Positions 20,669 through 29,669 of a stretch of DNA of 64,000 bases are shown here, in pieces. Location of the stretch: positions 310,001-374,000 of the IMG/VR virus record IMGVR_UViG_3300028558_000791; one strand, written 5' to 3'. The translations under genes were made by a program, and so were the position numbers. Under the pieces are notes generated by a model that saw only the letters and a program-made list of their open reading frames with translations, had not been told where the DNA came from and did no database searches. The stretch's first letter is position 1. Every line of letters begins with the position of its first letter.

Positions 20669-21661
20669 ATGTCTCCTACATTAATCAAAATCCTCGTAGC
20701 CGTTGGTGCTGTATTGACCATTGGCGTTGTAGGTCTAATCATCTACAATCAAATTCAAATCAGAAAACAGAATGATGCTATTCAATCTCAATTAGTTGAA
20801 CAACGATCATTAGTTGACGGCATTGTAAGAAGCCAGAATCAATATGCCACCAAGAGTGATGTTGATAAGTTTGCTAAGGACAATGGCATTAACCTAAACG
20901 CTATTCAATCTGATCTGGACAAACTACATGGAGAGATTAGCGCCGTAAACGTAGCCATCTCTACCAGCCAAGGCCAGCATGGCACCAACATTCCAAGCGT
21001 CAAGCCTACTCCAAGCAACCCAGTCAACCCTAACCCGGTGGACCCAGCCAACCCGGATCCTTTTGGTTATCAAAAATCTCAGCAGAATTTGGCTTTGAAT
21101 GAAGACTTCGGCACAATCAAGGTTCCGTTTGGCAGTGTCGGCTTCTCTGCTTGGCAGAAAGACCCATGGAGCGTGGATGTTAATCCAAGACAATACAACG
21201 TAGACACGGTTGTTGGGACTGACGAGAACCAGAGACAGTATTTCTACAATAAGTTTAGCGTAGTCACTGGAGATAAAACGTACGAAATCCCAATCAAGAC
21301 AGCTACTACTAAGCAAGAGTTCCCGACTGCTAAGTGGAGTTGGTGGAATCCAAGACTCCTAATGGGTCTGGATGGTGGCGTCAACATCACTAATGTCAAA
21401 GGAGAATTCACGCCACATGTTGGCGTTGGCATTATGTCCTATGGACAGTATAAAACTACGCCAGACTTCTCAATCTTAGAGGTGGGTGTAGGGTATGGAA
21501 CCATAAACAAGACTGGTCAAGTAGTGGTTACACCAGTTGCCTACAACATAGGTAAGAATCTGTTCTCACCACTGATGAACAACACATATATTGGCCCAAG
21601 CCTTTCAATTGGCACTGACGGTTCCATTGGAGCTGGAGCGGGCGTAAGGGTAGGTTTTTGA
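20669..21661 (+). CDS. Membrane-anchored protein: N-terminal TM helix, coiled coil, C-terminal beta-strand domain ending in Phe
   Basis: ILVAVGAVLTIGVVGLIIY TM; heptad region; Pro/Asn linker; amphipathic strands ending GAGAGVRVGF. Confidence 0.6.
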   Translation: MSPTLIKILVAVGAVLTIGVVGLIIYNQIQIRKQNDAIQSQLVEQRSLVDGIVRSQNQYATKSDVDKFAKDNGINLNAIQSDLDKLHGEISAVNVAISTSQGQHGTNIPSVKPTPSNPVNPNPVDPANPDPFGYQKSQQNLALNEDFGTIKVPFGSVGFSAWQKDPWSVDVNPRQYNVDTVVGTDENQRQYFYNKFSVVTGDKTYEIPIKTATTKQEFPTAKWSWWNPRLLMGLDGGVNITNVKGEFTPHVGVGIMSYGQYKTTPDFSILEVGVGYGTINKTGQVVVTPVAYNIGKNLFSPLMNNTYIGPSLSIGTDGSIGAGAGVRVGF

Positions 21662-22500
21662 TGTTACATATTCTCACTTTGACATGGAACGCTGCTGATA
21701 AGCTATCTAAATTGCATGAGACTCTTATGCCTGCTCTAGAAGGTATTGATTTCAAATGGTGGATCAAGGATAACGCTTCTAAAGATGATACAGTAGCCGT
21801 GGCCTCTACATGGGGAGATAAGGTAACTGTTATCCCTTACAAGGATAACCGCCAGAACTTCTCTGAAGGCTGCAACTTTCTCTTCAATGAGGCAAAACCC
21901 GCTGATGATGATTATGTCATGTTACTAAACAATGATATCGTTTTCAATGATACTGATTCTATCAAGAAGATGTTGGCCATTATTGAAAATGATGATTCAG
22001 TAGGAATGGTAGGCGCCCGCTTACTGTACACCAACACTGATCAGCTTCAGCACTGTGGCGTGGTATTCAATCCAACCTATAAGACTCCAATGCATTTCCG
22101 TGCAGGTCAGAAATCAGACAATGATGCCGAGCGAGATCGCGAGTTCCAAGTAGTCACTGGCGCCGTTTGTATCACCAAAGCAGAATACTTCCGTAAGGCT
22201 AATACGACCACTAAGTCTGGTATTGCTGGAATGGATGAGAGCTATCATTGGGCTTTTGATGATGTGGATTTGTGTCTGTCCATTAAGTACAATCTAAAGA
22301 AGAAAATTGTGTATTGTGGTAGGACCAATATCTTCCATGAAGAAAGTGCATCTCTCAAGAAGAACCAAGTCAATAAACTATTTTTGACTCACAACCTACA
22401 ATATCTTTTTGGAAAATGGCAGGGCCGCTACGATATAGATCAGGAAGCCTATGCTAAGGATTCCAGGCTCAACCTTTATCGAGGTCCTAGTGTCGGTTGA
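21658..22500 (+). CDS. Glycosyltransferase, GT2 family
   Basis: IKDNASKD, NFSEGCN, LLNND, VTGAVC, FDDVDLCL, HEESAS motifs. Confidence 0.85.
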   Translation: MMLHILTLTWNAADKLSKLHETLMPALEGIDFKWWIKDNASKDDTVAVASTWGDKVTVIPYKDNRQNFSEGCNFLFNEAKPADDDYVMLLNNDIVFNDTDSIKKMLAIIENDDSVGMVGARLLYTNTDQLQHCGVVFNPTYKTPMHFRAGQKSDNDAERDREFQVVTGAVCITKAEYFRKANTTTKSGIAGMDESYHWAFDDVDLCLSIKYNLKKKIVYCGRTNIFHEESASLKKNQVNKLFLTHNLQYLFGKWQGRYDIDQEAYAKDSRLNLYRGPSVG

Positions 22501-22711
22501 GTTAGGGTTGTACCAGCACTCCAAGGGCGGCCTTTACTGGGTAATTGGTATTGGAAAACACTCAGAGACTTTAGAGGAGATGGTTGTATATCAAAAGTAT
22601 TATGGCCCTGACGATCTTGGTGAAATATGGGTTCGACCTTTAAGCATGTGGTCTGAAGAAGTGAAACCTGGAGTTCCTCGTTTCCGAAAAGTAGATGATG
22701 TTGTGAAATAA
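22490..22711 (+). CDS. DUF1653-like protein
   Basis: GLYQHSKGGLYWVIGIGKHSETLEEMVVY...WVRPLSMW; probable GTG start at 22490. Confidence 0.75.
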   Translation: MSVELGLYQHSKGGLYWVIGIGKHSETLEEMVVYQKYYGPDDLGEIWVRPLSMWSEEVKPGVPRFRKVDDVVK

Positions 22712-22718
22712 GGTGTAA

Positions 22719-23693
22719 ATGAAAAAAGTTCTTGTAACAGGTACATGTGGTTTTATCTTTAGTAACTTTATTCGTAAAGCCATCTACGACCAAAATCAGA
22801 GAAGATCTCAAGATAAGGATTACACTTTTGTTAGCGTAGACCGTGTTACGGCTAATGCCATCAATTCTATGTATTGGAACAAGAACCATATCTTCCACCC
22901 GGCTGACATTCGTGACCAACATGTCATGGATGTAATCTTCCAATTTGAGAAGCCAGATATTGTTATCCATGGAGCGGCTGAGACCTTCGTGGATACATCG
23001 TTGAAAGACCCGAACTCTTTCGTAACCTCTAATGTGCTAGGCACCCAAGTTATCATTAACTCGTGCCTCAAACACAAAGTGGAGAGGATGATTTACATTT
23101 CCACAGATGAAGTGTATGGTCACCTTACCAGCGAGTCAGAGGCCGCCTGGAAGGAAGATGCGCCCCTCAATCCTAGAAACCCCTATTCAGCCTCTAAGGC
23201 TGCCGGGGAGCTAATGGTCAGAGCAGCCCACCAGACTCATGGATTAATTTATAACATTACTAGAAGCTCCAACTGCTATGGTCCCCGCCAGCTTCCTGAA
23301 AAGCTGGTGCCCAAGGCAATAAAGTGTGTTATGGATGGACAGAAAATCCCAATTTACGGTCAAGGTCAACAGATTAGAGATTGGACCTATGTAGCAGATA
23401 ATTGTACTGCCATAATGACAGTTTTAAACCAAGGTAAACCTAATGAGGTTTACAATATTTCCGCTAATCAGGAATTTACCAATATTGAAACTATTAACTT
23501 AGTTTGTAATGCCATGGGTAAGGGTCACGACTTGATATCCTTCATTCCAGATCCGAGAACCGGGCATGATTTTAGGTACGCGATTGATACTAGTAAAATT
23601 CGAGAGCTGGGCTGGAAGCCAACTTACAAATTTAAGGATGGCATCAGAGATACAGTACAGTGGTATCTAGATAACCAATGGTTTTTGAAGTGA
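22719..23693 (+). CDS. rmlB: dTDP-glucose 4,6-dehydratase (RmlB/RfbB-like SDR)
   Basis: VTGTCGFIFSNF, AAETFVD, ISTDEVYG, YSASKAA, NCYGPRQLPEKL, IRDW, GHDFRYAID. Confidence 0.9.
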   Translation: MKKVLVTGTCGFIFSNFIRKAIYDQNQRRSQDKDYTFVSVDRVTANAINSMYWNKNHIFHPADIRDQHVMDVIFQFEKPDIVIHGAAETFVDTSLKDPNSFVTSNVLGTQVIINSCLKHKVERMIYISTDEVYGHLTSESEAAWKEDAPLNPRNPYSASKAAGELMVRAAHQTHGLIYNITRSSNCYGPRQLPEKLVPKAIKCVMDGQKIPIYGQGQQIRDWTYVADNCTAIMTVLNQGKPNEVYNISANQEFTNIETINLVCNAMGKGHDLISFIPDPRTGHDFRYAIDTSKIRELGWKPTYKFKDGIRDTVQWYLDNQWFLK

Positions 23694-23718: not shown

Positions 23719-25077
23719 ATGCCCGCAACGTCAGTAACCGAACAAGATCAAAAAGAAGAAGTCATGGATGATGTATCCAATGAAGAAGTAAAGCCGTCTG
23801 AAACAGTAGACGTCAGCAAATTAGCAGCACTAAAGGCCAAGAGCCAAGCCAAGCAAGAGGAGAGTAAGATGGCAGCAAAGATTGTGTCAAAGAAAGACAG
23901 AAGTATCACATTAGGAGTTCTAGGATCAGGCCAGGCCGGTTCCAGAATTGCTGAAGCTTTCTACAAGCTCGGCTATGATGCTGTCGCAGTCAACACTGCC
24001 ATGCAGGATCTCAAGTTTATTGATATCCCAGATTCTAACAAGCTGCTGCTTGAGTACGGTTTGGGTGGAGCTGCCAAGGAAACCGAAATTGGTCGTGCGG
24101 CTGCTGAAGCTCATCGTGGAGAGATTCTCCAATTGGTTAATGAGAAGCTACAAAACTCGCAGGTCAACGTACTTTGCTTGAGTTTGGGTGGCGGTTCTGG
24201 TGCAGGTTCTTGCGATACTATGGTAGACATTCTATCATCTCTAGGTAAGCCACTTGTCGTTGTCACTGTACTTCCAATGGATACAGAAGACGCACAGACC
24301 AAGGCTAACGCATTAGAAACTCTTTCTAAGCTAGCTAAGGCAACACAAACTAAGAAGGTCAATAACCTAATTGTAGTAGACAATGCTAAGATTGAAGCTA
24401 TCTACCACAATATTAGCCAGGTTGATTTCTACGGCATTGCCAATAAAGCCATCGTAGAACCAATTGATATCTTCAATACACTTTCATCCTTACCATCAGC
24501 AGTCAAGGGACTAGATCCAATGGAATGGGGAAAGCTCTTTACAGATGGTGAGGGTTTAACTGTCTATGGTGAATTGACCATTGAAAACTTTGCCGAAGAT
24601 ACTGCTATTGCAGAAGCTGTCGTCAATAACTTGAATGGTAACTTGCTAGCTGGCGGTTTCGATCTAAAGCAGTCTAGATATGTTGGCGTTATCATTGCTG
24701 CCAACAAAGAAGTCTGGTCCAAAATCCCAAGCTCCAGTATTACTTATGCTATGGCCATGGTTAATGATCAATGTGGATCACCAAAGGGCGTATTCAAAGG
24801 TATCTACACTATAGAGACCCCAGACCCAGTAGTCAAGGTATACTCTATGTTTACTGGTCTCGGCTTACCAGAATCACGTATCACTCAACTAAAGAAGGAT
24901 ACGGCAGCCATGCAACAGAATGTCAAGGGTAAGGATGAGCAGCGCAACCTATCTCTCAATCTAGACACCGGTACTAATGAAACTGTCTCTGCTGCCCAAA
25001 AGGTTAAAGAGAAGATTGCGGCTAAGTCTTCTGCTTTCGGTAAGTTGGTTGGTGGTGTTGTTGACAGGAGAAAATAA
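23719..25077 (+). CDS. Tubulin/FtsZ-superfamily GTPase (PhuZ/TubZ/CetZ-like)
   Basis: GSGQAGSRIA, AVNTA, tubulin signature LGGGSGAG, VVDNAK. Confidence 0.85.
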   Translation: MPATSVTEQDQKEEVMDDVSNEEVKPSETVDVSKLAALKAKSQAKQEESKMAAKIVSKKDRSITLGVLGSGQAGSRIAEAFYKLGYDAVAVNTAMQDLKFIDIPDSNKLLLEYGLGGAAKETEIGRAAAEAHRGEILQLVNEKLQNSQVNVLCLSLGGGSGAGSCDTMVDILSSLGKPLVVVTVLPMDTEDAQTKANALETLSKLAKATQTKKVNNLIVVDNAKIEAIYHNISQVDFYGIANKAIVEPIDIFNTLSSLPSAVKGLDPMEWGKLFTDGEGLTVYGELTIENFAEDTAIAEAVVNNLNGNLLAGGFDLKQSRYVGVIIAANKEVWSKIPSSSITYAMAMVNDQCGSPKGVFKGIYTIETPDPVVKVYSMFTGLGLPESRITQLKKDTAAMQQNVKGKDEQRNLSLNLDTGTNETVSAAQKVKEKIAAKSSAFGKLVGGVVDRRK

Positions 25078-25310
25078 TGGATGTTCTAGATCACACAGAA
25101 ACATCTTCTCCAACTCTAATGAAAGATATTTTTACCAATCTCATTGGAGAAGATGTTTCTGTTTACATCAGTGGCAGCAGTAGTACTACTACGTTGAATG
25201 GACAGTTACAGTCTTACAATGGGTTTGTTTTACATCTCACTTCCAATGGTGGTAGGTATCATTCTTACATACCGGCCGATAAAGTATCCGCAATCTGTAG
25301 TGGTAAATAA
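25077..25310 (+). CDS. Sm/Hfq-like fold small protein
   Basis: LIGEDVSVYI...LNGQLQSYNGFVLHL...YIPADKVSAI matches the Sm1/Sm2 pattern. Confidence 0.55.
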   Translation: MDVLDHTETSSPTLMKDIFTNLIGEDVSVYISGSSSTTTLNGQLQSYNGFVLHLTSNGGRYHSYIPADKVSAICSGK

Positions 25311-25609
25311 TGGAAACTGATATTCTAAAACACTTCATTGGTAAGGATGTAGAAATTCTTGTCTCTGGTGTTTGGATTGAAGGTCATATGCAGCCTATTG
25401 CAAAAGGGGTTGTAACTTTAGTGCCTATAGGAGAGGCTAGTTCTTTTTATGGGCCAGCCGCCTGTAAGACAGAAGTGATTGTAGCAATTAGACAAGTGAT
25501 TCGTTCTGGTGTAAAGTTGGCCGAGCCAATACCAGAGATAAATCAAGACCCACCGATTAGATCAAGCATGGAGTCAATTACTCCAGGACAACGTTTCAAG
25601 AGGAAATAA
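25310..25609 (+). CDS. Sm/Hfq-like fold small protein
   Basis: LKHFIGKDVEILVSGVWIEGHM...VVTL...VIVAIR. Confidence 0.45.
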   Translation: METDILKHFIGKDVEILVSGVWIEGHMQPIAKGVVTLVPIGEASSFYGPAACKTEVIVAIRQVIRSGVKLAEPIPEINQDPPIRSSMESITPGQRFKRK

Positions 25610-25896
25610 TGAAAAGACTAAAGAGAGTAACCAAGCGCGAGAAGAAAGCAATGCTCAAATTCCTTAAGGACATGGAGGCTAACCAACCCAAATCCGATGT
25701 TGCTGTTAAGCCTAAGACTTCCAAAGTGAAGGTTGTAATTACTCTAACTAAATTCTTGGAGAACCAAGCTAAGAAGAAGTTAGCTAAGGCAATTCATCGT
25801 GAAGAGAAGCGTAATCTCAAAGCAGCAGCTAAGGGACAAAAGAAGCCAAATCATACGCATGACCATGACCACGAACATGAACATGAGCACAAATGA
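25609..25896 (+). CDS. Lys-rich basic protein with His/acidic tail
   Basis: Very basic body; ends HTHDHDHEHEHEHK. Confidence 0.6.
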   Translation: MKRLKRVTKREKKAMLKFLKDMEANQPKSDVAVKPKTSKVKVVITLTKFLENQAKKKLAKAIHREEKRNLKAAAKGQKKPNHTHDHDHEHEHEHK

Positions 25897-26147
25897 GATA
25901 TGAGATTCTAACCAACTATTTCGGGCAGCATGTAGAGGTTGGTATTATCAACAAGATTTTTAGCGGTATCCTAAGGCAAGCCGAATCAGATGGTGGTTTG
26001 AATGATATTGTAGAAATCGAACCAGGTAACGATTATGCTAGAAAACGCTATGGTTCCGCTATCTTAGATGTGAATACAATCACTTCTATCAGGGCAATTA
26101 AACCGCATACAGATGAAGATGACGACTGTTGTGAAGACAGTCCATAA
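25893..26147 (+). CDS. Sm/Hfq-like fold small protein
   Basis: LTNYFGQHVEVGIINKIFSGIL...IVEI...ILDVNTITSIR. Confidence 0.45.
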   Translation: MRYEILTNYFGQHVEVGIINKIFSGILRQAESDGGLNDIVEIEPGNDYARKRYGSAILDVNTITSIRAIKPHTDEDDDCCEDSP

Positions 26148-26168
26148 CTAAAGTAATTGGCGGTATGT

Positions 26169-27008
26169 ATGACAAACTTGATTAAGGGCCTTGACGTTTC
26201 GATCATTCAAGGAAACATAGATTTCAAAGCCGTAGCGGCGACCGGAGTTCAATTTGTAGTTTGCCGTTGTGGTGTTGGTAACGGTGGAATTGATTCCAAG
26301 TACAAACAGAACATTGCAAATGCTAGAGCCGCTGGCCTTAAGGTCATGGCATACCATTTCATTTACCCTTTGCCTCCCCTAGCTTCCCAACCTCTACGTG
26401 ACCCAAAGCTCCAAGCCAAGATGCACGTAGACGCTGCTGGTGGAGAACTAGCAGCTTGTGACTTAGAGTGGCCAGCCCCAGAAGATTGGGGTAAGTGGGG
26501 ATGTACTGCCGCTCAGATTACTGCGTGGTCTATTGCATATCTCGAAGAGTATGAACGTCTATCTGGTATTAGGCCAATTGTCTATACCTATCCATACTTC
26601 GCCAAGGCTATCAACCTACCAGCTTCATTTGGTGAGAAGTATAAGCTATGGATTGCTAGCTACCAAACTGGTGCTCCACTTATTCCAAAGCCTTGGACTG
26701 ATTGGGTCATGTGGCAATATTCTGGAGGAACTGGACCTGAAGCCCAGCATCTTCCAAGCGGTGCTCCAGTTGATGGTGATAGAGTTAGAGACTTATCACT
26801 ATGGGACGTAGAAGAGGCCCCTGAGCCCGCTCCAGAGCCAGTACCAGAGCCTGATCCAGTTCCTGCTCCACCAGACCCAGTTCCAGAAGAGCCGGCTCCT
26901 GTGCCCGCCCCAGCGCCACCAGTAGAGCCTGTTGTGGCTAAGGCAAATCCTTTGTTACAATTTTTTCAACTCTTCTCTGGACTATTTGGCAAGCTCCTCA
27001 AGAGATAA
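26169..27008 (+). CDS. GH25-family lysozyme (endolysin) with Pro/Glu linker and amphipathic C-terminal helix
   Basis: GLDVSIIQG, AYHF, CDLEW, PIVYTY, LWIASY, WQYS motifs. Confidence 0.85.
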   Translation: MTNLIKGLDVSIIQGNIDFKAVAATGVQFVVCRCGVGNGGIDSKYKQNIANARAAGLKVMAYHFIYPLPPLASQPLRDPKLQAKMHVDAAGGELAACDLEWPAPEDWGKWGCTAAQITAWSIAYLEEYERLSGIRPIVYTYPYFAKAINLPASFGEKYKLWIASYQTGAPLIPKPWTDWVMWQYSGGTGPEAQHLPSGAPVDGDRVRDLSLWDVEEAPEPAPEPVPEPDPVPAPPDPVPEEPAPVPAPAPPVEPVVAKANPLLQFFQLFSGLFGKLLKR

Positions 27009-28598: not shown

Positions 28599-29184
28599 TG
28601 ATGGAGGCGATCTGACGCCCATTCCGAATGACAAATACAAAAAGTTCTTCGAAAAGTTTGCTGAGATTGAAACCCTGGATGTGTCGCAATGGAAGGTTGC
28701 TCACATCCTTGGTTATTTCTGCAAGAAGTATAAGCAGACTTATGGGATTGATTACTCCTGGAAGTTCAATAATCAAAGCCCCAATAAGTCCTTCGAGGTT
28801 TGGCAAGCCAATACATTAGCGGCCAAGTTATCTGCCAATCCCAAGATTCTACGAGACTACATAGACTGGGTATACACTAACTATGTGCCCAAAACTAAGG
28901 CTCGTTTCCGTTCAGTTTCTTTCATTACCAAGGATGAGATTGTTCAAGACTACAAGATGAATGTACTGCTAGCAGGACAGAAGAATCTTCAGGTAGATCG
29001 TTCAACTCAACTGCCACCAAACTACATTGAGATTATGAAAGAGATTGGCGGGGTCAATGTCTCCAGTTATGGAGACTTGGCGTTCTTATCACACATGGAT
29101 CCAATGCCAGATAATCTAGCCAAGGCATTAGAGAAGCTTGCTGAGTTTGGATTGGACCAAGCTGTATTGAAGAGGATTGTATGA
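28582..29184 (+). CDS. Hypothetical replication-associated protein
   Basis: Clean ORF between the helicase and the DnaC-like loader; function by context only. Confidence 0.6.
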   Translation: MSKTNDDGGDLTPIPNDKYKKFFEKFAEIETLDVSQWKVAHILGYFCKKYKQTYGIDYSWKFNNQSPNKSFEVWQANTLAAKLSANPKILRDYIDWVYTNYVPKTKARFRSVSFITKDEIVQDYKMNVLLAGQKNLQVDRSTQLPPNYIEIMKEIGGVNVSSYGDLAFLSHMDPMPDNLAKALEKLAEFGLDQAVLKRIV

Positions 29185-29669
29185 ACACTGGACCACTATT
29201 TCTGATAAACAAAGACCAACACGTCAAGTGCTTCTTACGAAGCGGAATGGTGCTTGAAGGAATCGTGGAAGAATACACGATGTCTCAGGTTGTATTGCGA
29301 TCATTAAGCGACGGAAGCTTAATCATTATACATCATCCTGGCGAAGATATAGTGCTGACCAAGGTTATGCCAGACGTTGTGGCACAGGAAGTCCCAGTTC
29401 AGCCAAAAGCTCCAGTAATTCCTAATGACAATCCTGTCAAAGAAAAGCTACAGGAAGTATTGCAAACTGAGGATCCTGAGCTTCAAAAACTAAGCATTGA
29501 AGAACTACGTCAACTAGTTCAAGAGCAGGATAGGCAAATCATTGCTCAGAAAAGAAGAGAACATTTTGGGTCACCCGGTAATGCTAAGATGACCAAATAT
29601 AGTTCACCATACCAGCCAGGGAAGATCCCTTCTTGGGCTTATGGACGTCCGCCTCGTAAGGGAGAATAA
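29181..29669 (+). CDS. Hypothetical protein with N-terminal Sm-like pattern
   Basis: HVKCFLRSGMVLEGIVEEYTMSQVVL; C-terminal coiled region. Confidence 0.55.
   Translation: MNTGPLFLINKDQHVKCFLRSGMVLEGIVEEYTMSQVVLRSLSDGSLIIIHHPGEDIVLTKVMPDVVAQEVPVQPKAPVIPNDNPVKEKLQEVLQTEDPELQKLSIEELRQLVQEQDRQIIAQKRREHFGSPGNAKMTKYSSPYQPGKIPSWAYGRPPRKGE

What the first reader, a model, noticed from the sequence alone, without database searches (positions are those of the whole stretch)
25077..26147. Cluster of Sm/Hfq-like small proteins directly downstream of the phage tubulin
Seen: three short ORFs (25077, 25310, 25893) share L-x-x-x-x-G-x-x-V-x-[VI]...G-x-[LM]...[VI]-x-[LI]...[VI]-x-[AS]-I. The first (VSVYI...LNGQLQSYNGFVLHL) closely parallels the Hfq Sm1 motif (VSIYL...LQGQIESFDQFVILL). 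ORF 29181 has a fourth similar N-terminus. Established: Sm/Hfq proteins form RNA-binding rings. Inference: the phage may encode a heteromeric Sm-like ring or Hfq decoys for RNA control, co-expressed with its cytoskeleton.
Basis: partly seen in the sequence, partly recalled or inferred. Interest (0 to 1): 0.65.

Follow-up and report, generated by a model that had tools for sequence, protein, structure and literature searches.

The report
Megaphage cluster of Sm-fold small proteins
Three small genes just after the tubulin gene of an uncultivated 480-kb phage are real, distantly related copies of a new, phage-restricted branch of the Sm/LSm/Hfq protein fold, but they lack the usual RNA-binding residues and relatives of the phage do without them, so an RNA role or a link to the tubulin is unproven.

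Summary
ORFs 25077-25310, 25310-25609 and 25893-26147 are homologous, under purifying selection, and translationally coupled to the tubulin/TubZ-like gene.

The Sm assignment also holds. An AlphaFold2 model shows an N-terminal helix plus five strands. Its best PDB matches are Hfq/Sm/LSm chains (Z 7.4-8.1). An 88-member family profile hits archaeal SmAP3 at E 3.7e-6. One paralog passes Pfam DUF6897. A four-copy fold gave the canonical beta4-beta5 Sm interface (ipSAE 0.43, best control 0.15).

The functional inference is not supported:
- The uridine-binding residues of Sm and the Q8/K56/H57 and rim arginines of Hfq are not conserved.
- The cores are mildly acidic, and most tails are strongly acidic and often contain Cys.
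- The genes sit in a hypervariable slot between tubulin and a UvsW-like helicase. Four complete relatives lack the family altogether.

The family has only 93 clusters among 1.84 billion representatives. The five contexts resolved beyond the related loci: three in this slot, one uninformative, one a Bacillota spore-coat locus.

ORF 29181 has a separate Hfq-like barrel and is a core replication-module gene.

Verdict: a new variant of a known fold, of moderate interest.

The parts
23719..25077 (+). Tubulin/TubZ-like GTPase (452 aa). This is the context gene; its stop overlaps the start of the first Sm-like ORF.
   Evidence: Pfam Tubulin 4.3e-16, TubZ-like_C 7.9e-06; PHROG tubulin PhuZ 1.8e-08. 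TAATG junction. Nearest cultured relative is Bacillus phage G, 23% identity.
25077..25310 (+). Sm-like paralog 'type C' (P0001, 77 aa, no tail). The most Hfq-like in sequence and specific to this genome.
   Evidence: Pfam DUF6897 32.8 bits, above the 23.9 cut-off. Singleton by word search. Absent from the closest relatives L003 and L004, where the P0002 orthologue follows the tubulin directly. Weak homologues in L047 and L053. Profile hits S. aureus Hfq at E 0.0019.
25310..25609 (+). Sm-like paralog 'type A' (P0002, 99 aa). Sm core at residues 1-64, then a Pro-rich linker and the conserved basic tail motif RSS[LM]E..TPGQRFKR.
   Evidence: AF2 model pLDDT 84 (above 93 over residues 1-60): helix 3-9 plus five strands. 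Foldseek and VIA top hits are Sm/LSm/Hfq. Orthologues in about 20 loci at 55-87% identity. dN/dS 0.17-0.25.
25609..25896 (+). Basic Lys/Arg-rich protein (P0003, 95 aa, pI 10.3) with an HDHEHEHEH tail, set between the Sm-like genes.
   Evidence: Family alignment A4. 47 clusters, all from metagenomes, with no Pfam or PDB match. dN/dS 0.08-0.16. Lies next to Sm-like genes in 9 of 13 distinct Sm-bearing slot layouts.
25893..26147 (+). Sm-like paralog 'type B' (P0004, 84 aa) with the acidic Cys-containing tail DEDDDCCEDSP.
   Evidence: jackhmmer links it to P0002 in both directions. hhalign type A vs type B: 97.2%, E 3.8e-11. dN/dS 0.09. Tail net charge -7.
29181..29669 (+). Separate core gene (P0005, 162 aa): N-terminal Hfq/Sm-like five-strand barrel without the N-terminal helix, then a coiled coil and a conserved C-terminal motif. 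It lies between a 200-aa ORF and the DnaC/IstB-like and DnaB genes.
   Evidence: 38 relatives. AF2 strands at 14-62 with pLDDT above 90. Profile hits Hfq 4y91 at E 1.4e-3. VIA Z 5.2-6.0 to Hfq/SmAP. Neighbouring genes.

Best explanation
SHOWN. The three ORFs are diverged paralogs of a small family of Sm-fold (LSm/Hfq-superfamily) proteins. Its phage members have been found only in one lineage of uncultivated ~430-500 kb phages. Pfam DUF6897 captures part of the family. They are expressed as a translationally coupled run: tubulin, Sm-C, Sm-A, basic His-tailed protein, Sm-B. The run sits in a hypervariable accessory slot between the tubulin gene and a UvsW-like helicase gene.

INFERRED, moderately supported. 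Each protein self-associates through the canonical Sm edge pairing, beta5 of one subunit against beta4 of the next. The family-specific conserved residues R61 and Y47-G48 lie at that contact. This would give a ring or an open oligomer.

INFERRED, weakly supported. The oligomers act as accessory nucleic-acid-handling factors of the RNA chaperone/regulator type. They would use a non-canonical surface: the basic tail of type A, or the co-encoded basic protein, whose charge the acidic tails of type B would complement. The position next to the tubulin gene is an accident of the variable slot, not a functional coupling.
For: Fold:
- AF2 model shows a helix plus five strands, pLDDT above 93 over the core.
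- Foldseek top 50 hits are almost all Sm/LSm/Hfq, TMt 0.6-0.7.
- VIA Z 7.4-8.1, rmsd 1.6-2.9 A over 53-64 residues, mostly to Hfq, SmAP and snRNP Sm chains, but also RimP, YaeO, Gemin6, GerQ and a designed SH3-like barrel in the same Z range.

Homology:
- 88-member profile hits SmAP3 1m5q at 3.7e-6 and 1ycy at 2.3e-5, followed by SmG, archaeal Sm, LSm8 and LSm6.
- Individual members hit Pfam DUF6897 (14), LSM (7), SM-ATX (4) and DUF2642 (1).
- The Sm1 glycine is invariant (G25).

Oligomer:
- Four copies of residues 1-66 gave ipSAE 0.43 (runs 0.50, 0.43, 0.34) against a best control of 0.15. Partner pLDDT was at least 85 and the runs shared at least 97% of contacts.
- In calibration this mark was reached by 20 of 30 proteins solved as pairs and 1 of 23 solved as single chains.
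- The lowest-error contacts were 61-50, 61-47, 59-52 and 58-53, which is beta5 against beta4.

Real genes: dN/dS 0.09-0.25 and overlapping stop/start codons.

Accessory status: the slot holds 0-3 copies across 34 distinct layouts. Four complete relatives have none. The own genome has exactly three.

Restricted family: 93 clusters among 1.84 billion representatives. Divergent members P0079, P0086 and P0094 sit in the same slot.

Against: - No RNA-binding signature. Loop 3 and loop 5 positions are variable or acidic. The Sm Asn / Arg-Gly and the Hfq Q8, K56, H57 and rim Arg have no conserved equivalents.
- Median core net charge is -1 (pI 6.0). 53 of 88 tails have net charge of -3 or lower.
- No Rfam RNA anywhere in the window.
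- The multimer pass may reflect the model's memory of solved Sm rings. It used four copies and my own alignment, which is outside the calibration.
- Foldseek E-values are only about 2e-3, and VIA Z of about 8 is in the range the tool calls middling.
- The sequence-nearest Pfam families (DUF6897, DUF2642) occur in Bacillota spore-coat loci, where RNA binding is not expected.
- No expression data could be obtained.
Confidence: 0.4

Rival explanations
1. Protein-directed decoy or host-takeover / anti-defence factors. Small acidic Sm-barrel oligomers carry nucleic-acid-mimicking acidic tails that sequester a basic host protein or the phage's own basic protein, and they do not bind RNA themselves.
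For: Acidic cores and strongly acidic tails in 53 of 88 members. Fast divergence relative to the tubulin: 56-87% against 88-98% identity in the same loci. Copy number varies from 0 to 3 in a hypervariable slot that also takes up GIY-YIG and HNH homing endonucleases. Dispensable in complete relatives. RNA-contact residues are not conserved.
Against: dN/dS of 0.09-0.25 shows no pervasive positive selection. No similarity to any known anti-defence protein was sought or found. The type A tail is basic, not acidic.
Confidence: 0.27
2. Tubulin accessory factors. The Sm-like proteins, with or without the basic protein, would be adaptors or modulators of the TubZ-like filament, analogous to TubR/TubY, linking a cargo (DNA or RNA) to the cytoskeleton.
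For: Strict position immediately 3' of the tubulin gene with overlapping stop/start codons. Every family member from this phage lineage that was located lies in this slot. This tubulin has no TubR-like winged-helix gene upstream, whereas Bacillus phage G has a 98-aa ORF there that looks winged-helix by eye (not tested).
Against: In many relatives the helicase gene follows the tubulin gene within 18-135 nt. Four complete genomes with 66-74% identical tubulins have no family member anywhere. The slot also carries a GH25 lysozyme and homing endonucleases, so it collects unrelated cargo. No complex with the tubulin was modelled.
Confidence: 0.1
3. Metal-handling or structural self-assembly module. 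The Cys/Asp/Glu tails of the Sm-like proteins and the His/Asp/Glu tail of the basic protein would bind a metal together. Alternatively the barrels would polymerise into filaments or layers, as DUF6897/DUF2642-type spore-coat proteins and GerQ do.
For: 38 of 88 tails contain Cys within acidic runs. The basic-protein family has (H-x)n tails that JGI auto-names as a Zn-binding protein. P0001 passes the DUF6897 cut-off. A tandem DUF6897/DUF2642 protein sits beside CotH, YwrJ and GerA genes. GerQ filament and MnxE are among the structural matches.
Against: Tails are not conserved across subtypes: type C has none and type A has a basic one. The genes lie in a replication/early block, not among virion genes. 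His- and Cys-rich tails are compositional features, not motifs.
Confidence: 0.1

Closest known systems
Archaeal Sm-like proteins (SmAP3 of Pyrobaculum aerophilum, PDB 1m5q; P. abyssi Sm 1h64/1m8v; P. furiosus 1ycy)
   Same: Best sequence-profile matches (E 3.7e-6 and 2.3e-5). Same N-terminal helix plus five-strand barrel. Conserved Sm1 glycine. Predicted beta4-beta5 subunit contact.
   Different: The loop 3 Asp/Asn and loop 5 Arg that bind uridine are not conserved. An extra short helix and a conserved Tyr-Gly-Pro precede beta4. Tails are acidic with Cys, or basic. The genes are phage-encoded and occur as a multi-paralog run.
Bacterial and archaeal Hfq
   Same: Among the top structural matches: Z 7.4-8.1, e.g. 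M. jannaschii Hfq at rmsd 1.6 A over 53 residues. The family's Y47 aligns with the Tyr of the Hfq YKH Sm2 motif. The P0001 subtype profile hits S. aureus Hfq at E 0.0019.
   Different: No Pfam Hfq hit at the thresholds used (E<=10 for the window proteins, E<=0.01 for the 88 members). Q8, K56, H57 and the rim arginines are absent. The N-terminal helix is shorter.
Pfam DUF6897 (PF21838) and DUF2642 (PF10842), Bacillota proteins including CotB-like spore-coat loci
   Same: P0001 scores above the DUF6897 gathering cut-off. 14 of 88 family members hit it at E<0.01.
   Different: P0002 is below the cut-off and P0004 is not detected. The Bacillota proteins carry tandem domains with low-complexity Arg/Ser/Gly/Asn tails and sit beside coat and germination genes.
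T4 GoF / MotB.1 / Frd.2 LSm-like fold family (PMC12152347)
   Same: Phage-encoded, several diverged paralogs per genome, non-essential, five-strand Sm-like barrel, and suspected but unproven RNA function.
   Different: The T4 proteins are dispersed in the genome and carry C-terminal domains. AlphaFold3 gave them no confident multimers. Here the genes are clustered and coupled, and a multimer fold passed its controls. Sequence kinship between the two families was not tested.
TubR/TubY partners of TubZ (type III partition systems)
   Same: Small genes adjacent to and co-transcribed with a TubZ-like tubulin.
   Different: TubR is a winged-helix DNA binder (my own knowledge of the TubZRC literature). 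Here the fold is Sm, the genes lie downstream in a variable slot, and complete relatives lack them.

Membership tests
Sm/LSm/Hfq superfamily (Sm fold) | N-terminal alpha-helix followed by five strongly bent antiparallel beta-strands | tested here: met
   AF2 model of P0002: H3-9, E13-18, E21-27, E34-38, E50-53, E57-62, pLDDT above 93 over residues 1-60. Best structural matches are Sm/LSm/Hfq chains.
Sm/LSm/Hfq superfamily (Sm fold) | Significant sequence-profile similarity to established members | tested here: met
   A2 profile vs PDB: SmAP3 3.7e-6, 1ycy 2.3e-5, then SmG, archaeal Sm, LSm8 and LSm6 at 2e-3 to 2.5e-2. Seven members hit Pfam LSM and four hit SM-ATX at E<0.01.
Sm/LSm/Hfq superfamily (Sm fold) | Sm1 motif with a conserved glycine in beta2 | tested here: met
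   G25 is invariant in 88 sequences. The hydrophobic pattern V14, I16, L27, L37 is conserved.
Sm/LSm/Hfq superfamily (Sm fold) | Sm2 motif and nucleotide-contact residues (Sm: loop 3 Asn, loop 5 Arg-Gly; Hfq: Q8, F/Y42, K56, H57) | tested here: not met
   Columns equivalent to loop 3 (positions 29-33) and loop 5 (53-56) are variable or acidic. Only the Tyr equivalent to the Hfq Y55 is kept (Y47).
Sm/LSm/Hfq superfamily (Sm fold) | Ring oligomer built by beta4-beta5 pairing of neighbouring subunits | tested here: inconclusive
   Four-copy fold: ipSAE 0.43, best control 0.15, contacts 58-66 with 45-53. This supports the interface, but ring closure and stoichiometry cannot be shown with four copies, and the model may be recalling solved Sm rings.
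Sm/LSm/Hfq superfamily (Sm fold) | Binds RNA | not testable with these tools
   Needs EMSA, anisotropy or CLIP. The indirect indicators (charge, motifs) are unfavourable.
Hfq proper (Pfam Hfq) | Match to the Hfq family model and the YKH Sm2 motif | tested here: not met
   No Pfam Hfq hit for the window proteins at E<=10 or for the 88 members at E<=0.01. The family has YG[PA] in place of YKH.
Pfam DUF6897 (PF21838) | Score at or above the gathering cut-off of 23.9 bits | tested here: inconclusive
   P0001 scores 32.8 bits (met), P0002 scores 20.9 bits (below), P0004 has no hit. 14 of 88 members hit at E<0.01.
TubZ partner proteins (TubR/TubY-like adaptors) | Obligatory co-occurrence with the tubulin gene, and a DNA-binding winged-helix (TubR) | tested here: not met
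   The fold is Sm, not winged-helix. Of 34 distinct slot layouts, 21 lacked a family match in the scan, and one of those (L053) carries a divergent member detected by the other model. Four complete relatives lack it genome-wide.
T4 GoF/MotB.1/Frd.2 LSm-like family | Sequence-profile kinship to GoF-family N-terminal domains | not tested
   The T4 sequences were not fetched. tblastn of P0002 against 50,697 phage records gave no match at E<=1.

The most novel reading that the evidence does not exclude
The Sm-like oligomers, together with the basic His-tailed protein, would form a ribonucleoprotein or nucleoprotein adaptor that rides on the phage's TubZ-like filament. This would be a cytoskeleton-coupled Sm particle in a bacteriophage, taking the place of the missing TubR-type adaptor in the sub-lineage that carries it.
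Probability: 0.06. Interest if true: 0.85.

Novelty: new variant of a known kind. Interest (0 to 1): 0.45.

Why it matters
Sm/LSm/Hfq rings are central RNA-handling machines in all domains of life. Phage versions are barely known: T4 GoF/MotB.1/Frd.2 and one putative cyanophage protein.

This finding defines a compact, sequence-detectable Sm branch whose phage members are found only in one lineage of very large uncultivated phages. It has up to three diverged paralogs per genome, unusual acidic/Cys or basic tails, and a linked basic His-tailed partner.

If the proteins bind RNA despite lacking the canonical pocket, they would show a new way of using the Sm scaffold. If they do not, they add to the evidence that phages reuse this barrel for other purposes. 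Either way, they give these megaphages some annotatable accessory genes.

The result also corrects a tempting over-reading: the position next to the tubulin gene reflects a hypervariable insertion slot, not a demonstrated cytoskeletal partnership.

Tried and rejected
- Pairwise BLASTP of P0004 against P0001 and P0002 found nothing. Profiles were needed.
- Word search with P0001 returned only itself.
- phmmer of P0001 against PDB gave only a compositional match to actinohivin repeats. I rejected it as spurious.
- PHROGs gave no family for any of the small ORFs.
- megablast and tblastn against 50,697 phage records found no relative of the region or of P0002. The only cultured tubulin relative is Bacillus phage G at 23% identity, and it has no Sm-like neighbours.
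- The ESM Atlas feature search gave only unnamed clusters at scores around 0.9, which is not informative.
- A literature search for DUF6897 returned no papers. The GerQ filament paper does not discuss an Sm or SH3 fold.
- Promoter and terminator scans were at background level, and Rfam found nothing in the window.
- The basic-protein profile has no PDB match.
- hhalign of the trio's family against the P0005 family gave only 7-10% probability, so I do not count P0005 as a fourth member.
- Co-occurrence of Sm-like genes with the basic gene (Fisher p 5e-4) and with GH25 (p 5e-6) is confounded by shared ancestry of the loci. I do not use it as evidence of function.
- Complexes with the tubulin, with P0003, or between paralogs were not modelled. 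The single complex job went to the homo-oligomer.
Full report
SETTING

The window is bases 310001-374000 of a 480,838-bp IMG/VR virus record. The flagged region lies in a long co-directional gene block:
- GT2 glycosyltransferase, DUF1653 protein and an NDP-sugar dehydratase/epimerase;
- a tubulin/TubZ-like gene at 23719-25077;
- five short ORFs;
- a GH25 lysozyme and a UvsW/ResIII-type helicase;
- a 200-aa ORF and P0005;
- an IstB/DnaC-like ATPase and a DnaB-type helicase.

No cultured phage is close. The only tubulin match among 50,697 phage records is Bacillus phage G, at 23% identity.

OBSERVATION

The three ORFs exist as described.

P0001 (25077-25310) and P0002 (25310-25609) are related by BLASTP, E 7e-6. 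Both hit Pfam DUF6897. P0001 scores above the curated cut-off and P0002 scores below it.

P0004 (25893-26147) cannot be linked pairwise. I collected 53 related loci through the tubulin and used their ORFs to test the link:
- jackhmmer connects the P0002 and P0004 families in both directions.
- HMMs built without any window sequence recover the other paralogs as the next-best hits among 319 window ORFs. The type B model finds P0002 at 3e-9 and P0001 at 0.011.
- hhalign of type A against type B gives 97.2% probability, E 3.8e-11.

A family profile finds exactly these three copies in the whole 480-kb genome.

The genes are real. dN/dS against orthologues is 0.17-0.25 for P0002, 0.08-0.16 for P0003 and 0.09 for P0004, compared with 0.02-0.06 for the tubulin. 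All junctions from the tubulin stop onwards are TAATG or ATGA overlaps.

It is a Lys/Arg-rich protein (pI 10.3) with an HDHEHEHEH tail.

FOLD AND FAMILY

An AlphaFold2 model of P0002, built on a 33-sequence alignment, is confident over the core (pLDDT above 93 for residues 1-60). It shows an N-terminal helix followed by five strands.

Foldseek's top matches are almost exclusively Sm, LSm, SmAP and Hfq chains. E-values are only about 2e-3, which is usual for a 60-residue domain, and TM normalised by target is 0.6-0.7. Re-alignment gives Z 7.4-8.1, for example M. jannaschii Hfq at rmsd 1.6 A over 53 residues. The tool itself warns that Z near 8 is middling, so the sequence evidence matters.

The exhaustive HMM search found only 93 clusters among 1.84 billion representatives. 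An 88-member profile built from them hits:
- SmAP3 (1m5q) at 3.7e-6;
- the P. furiosus protein 1ycy at 2.3e-5;
- then a run of SmG, archaeal Sm, LSm8, LSm6, LSm2 and EDC3.

Scanned individually, members hit DUF6897 (14), LSM (7), SM-ATX (4) and DUF2642 (1). The Sm1 glycine (G25) is invariant.

I conclude that the trio belongs to the Sm-like superfamily as a divergent branch of its own.

WHAT IS AND IS NOT CONSERVED

Residue positions were mapped using the HMMER alignments to S. aureus Hfq and SmAP3 and the column statistics.

The positions that contact RNA in canonical Sm proteins (loop 3 Asn, loop 5 Arg-Gly) and in Hfq (Q8, Y/F42, K56, H57, rim arginines) are variable or acidic here. Only the Tyr equivalent to the Hfq Y55 survives, as Y47.

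The family's own conserved polar residues are K12, E15, P39, Y47-G48 and R61. Cores are mildly acidic (median net charge -1, pI 6.0). Tails fall into three classes:
- type A (P0002): a Pro-rich linker and a conserved basic motif, RSS[LM]E..TPGQRFKR;
- type B (P0004): strongly acidic and often Cys-containing, such as DEDDDCCEDSP;
- type C (P0001): no tail.

Overall, 53 of 88 tails have a net charge of -3 or lower, and 38 contain Cys.

OLIGOMERISATION

Four copies of residues 1-66 scored ipSAE 0.43 (three runs: 0.50, 0.43, 0.34). The best of three controls scored 0.15. Partner pLDDT was at least 85 and the runs shared at least 97% of contacts.

In the tool's calibration this mark was reached by 20 of 30 proteins solved as pairs and 1 of 23 solved as single chains. 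The counts hold only roughly here, because I used four copies and my own alignment.

The lowest-error contacts (61-50, 61-47, 59-52, 58-53) are beta5 of one copy against beta4 of the next. This is the canonical Sm interface, and it places the family-specific R61 and Y47-G48 at the contact.

This supports self-association but does not show it. The model may be recalling solved Sm rings, and ring size cannot be derived.

GENOMIC BEHAVIOUR

The interval between tubulin and helicase is hypervariable. There are 34 distinct layouts among the 42 loci that span it. It ranges from 18 nt, with the helicase directly after the tubulin, to about 2.8 kb. It holds 0-3 Sm-like genes, the basic-protein gene, the GH25 lysozyme, unrelated small ORFs, and GIY-YIG or HNH homing endonucleases.

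- P0001 is absent from the closest relatives (tubulin 94-98% identical). There the P0002 orthologue starts right after the tubulin stop.
- Divergent family members retrieved from the global search lie in the same slot.
- Four complete related genomes of 435-452 kb have no family member anywhere. The same kind of search, run with the smaller A1 profile, found three in the window's own genome.

The genes are therefore accessory, and the tubulin works without them in close kin. The statistical association of Sm-like genes with the basic gene and with GH25 is confounded by shared descent.

ORF 29181

P0005 is conserved in 38 relatives, including those that lack the Sm cluster. Its N-terminus is a confident five-strand barrel with no N-terminal helix.

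Its profile hits Hfq best (4y91, E 1.4e-3), then EDC3 and other Hfq chains. VIA gives Z 5.2-6.0 to Hfq and SmAP. Kinship with the trio is not significant.

It is a core replication-module protein with an Hfq/Sm-like small barrel, and it is a separate matter from the cluster.

MECHANISM

Shown: a paralogous Sm-fold family that is translationally coupled, accessory and lineage-restricted.

Inferred with moderate support: self-association through beta4-beta5 pairing.

Inferred with weak support: a nucleic-acid-handling role through non-canonical surfaces, possibly together with the basic protein. I give this explanation as a whole 0.40.

The main rival (0.27) is a protein-directed decoy or host-takeover role. 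The acidic composition, rapid divergence and variable-slot location favour it. A tubulin-adaptor role (0.10) is disfavoured by the gene's dispensability in relatives. A metal-handling or structural role (0.10) rests only on tail composition and on the spore-coat context of the nearest Pfam families.

COMPARISON AND NOVELTY

The closest known families are archaeal SmAPs and Hfq by fold and profile, DUF6897/DUF2642 by family model, and the T4 GoF/MotB.1/Frd.2 LSm-like trio as a biological precedent (PMC12152347).

Unlike the T4 proteins, these are clustered, have the N-terminal helix, are detectably Sm by sequence, and pass a multimer test. This is a new variant of a known kind.

LIMITS

- No complex with the tubulin, with P0003, or between paralogs was modelled.
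- Host and habitat are unknown.

Noticed in passing
window 25609-25896: A lineage-restricted basic protein family (pI about 10, K+R about 30%). It has a conserved core FSLTxYLxxxAQKKLxKLxxRxEKR and an (H-x)n His/Asp/Glu tail. There is no Pfam or PDB match. JGI auto-names some members as a Zn-binding protein because of the His run.
   Followed up: partly
window 29181-29669: A core replication-module protein with an N-terminal Hfq/Sm-like five-strand barrel (no N-terminal helix), a coiled coil and a conserved C-terminal KKVxYGxPGFFxKP motif. It sits just upstream of the DnaC/IstB-like and DnaB genes and is conserved in 38 relatives.
   Followed up: partly
L036:1463-2107, L044:7365-8012, L047:3827-4453, L032:7365-8042; L057:5564-6187: In relatives, the slot between the tubulin and helicase genes carries GIY-YIG and HNH homing-endonuclease genes. 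This marks it as an insertion hot spot.
   Followed up: partly
L053:7401-7604 and L021:7402-7701: Further small ORFs in the same slot look Sm-like by eye. L053 ends ...YIKKNAISALTY, close to the Hfq YKHAIS. L021 hits SM-ATX and LSM weakly, at E 0.04-0.07. The family HMM does not catch them, so copy numbers are lower bounds.
   Followed up: partly
window 26157-27008: A GH25 lysozyme with a Pro-rich PEPAPEPVPEP linker and a hydrophobic C-terminal segment sits inside the replication-gene block. The listed ORF starts at TTG, and ATG codons follow within about 15 nt.
   Followed up: no
window 21658-23693: Sugar-modification genes (GT2 glycosyltransferase, DUF1653, NDP-sugar 4,6-dehydratase/epimerase) lie immediately upstream of the tubulin gene, with only 25 nt between them. 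The same arrangement occurs in relative L057.
   Followed up: no
L060:3689-3985 (Bacillus phage G gp137): The distant tubulin homologue of Bacillus phage G is directly preceded by a 98-aa ORF that looks like a winged-helix, TubR-like protein. The window's tubulin has no such neighbour.
   Followed up: no
L059:4001-4753: A tandem DUF2642/DUF6897 protein with an Arg/Ser/Gly/Asn-rich tail lies between CotH and YwrJ and next to GerA-family genes in a Bacillota contig. The Pfam families nearest to the phage proteins are therefore spore-coat-associated.
   Followed up: partly
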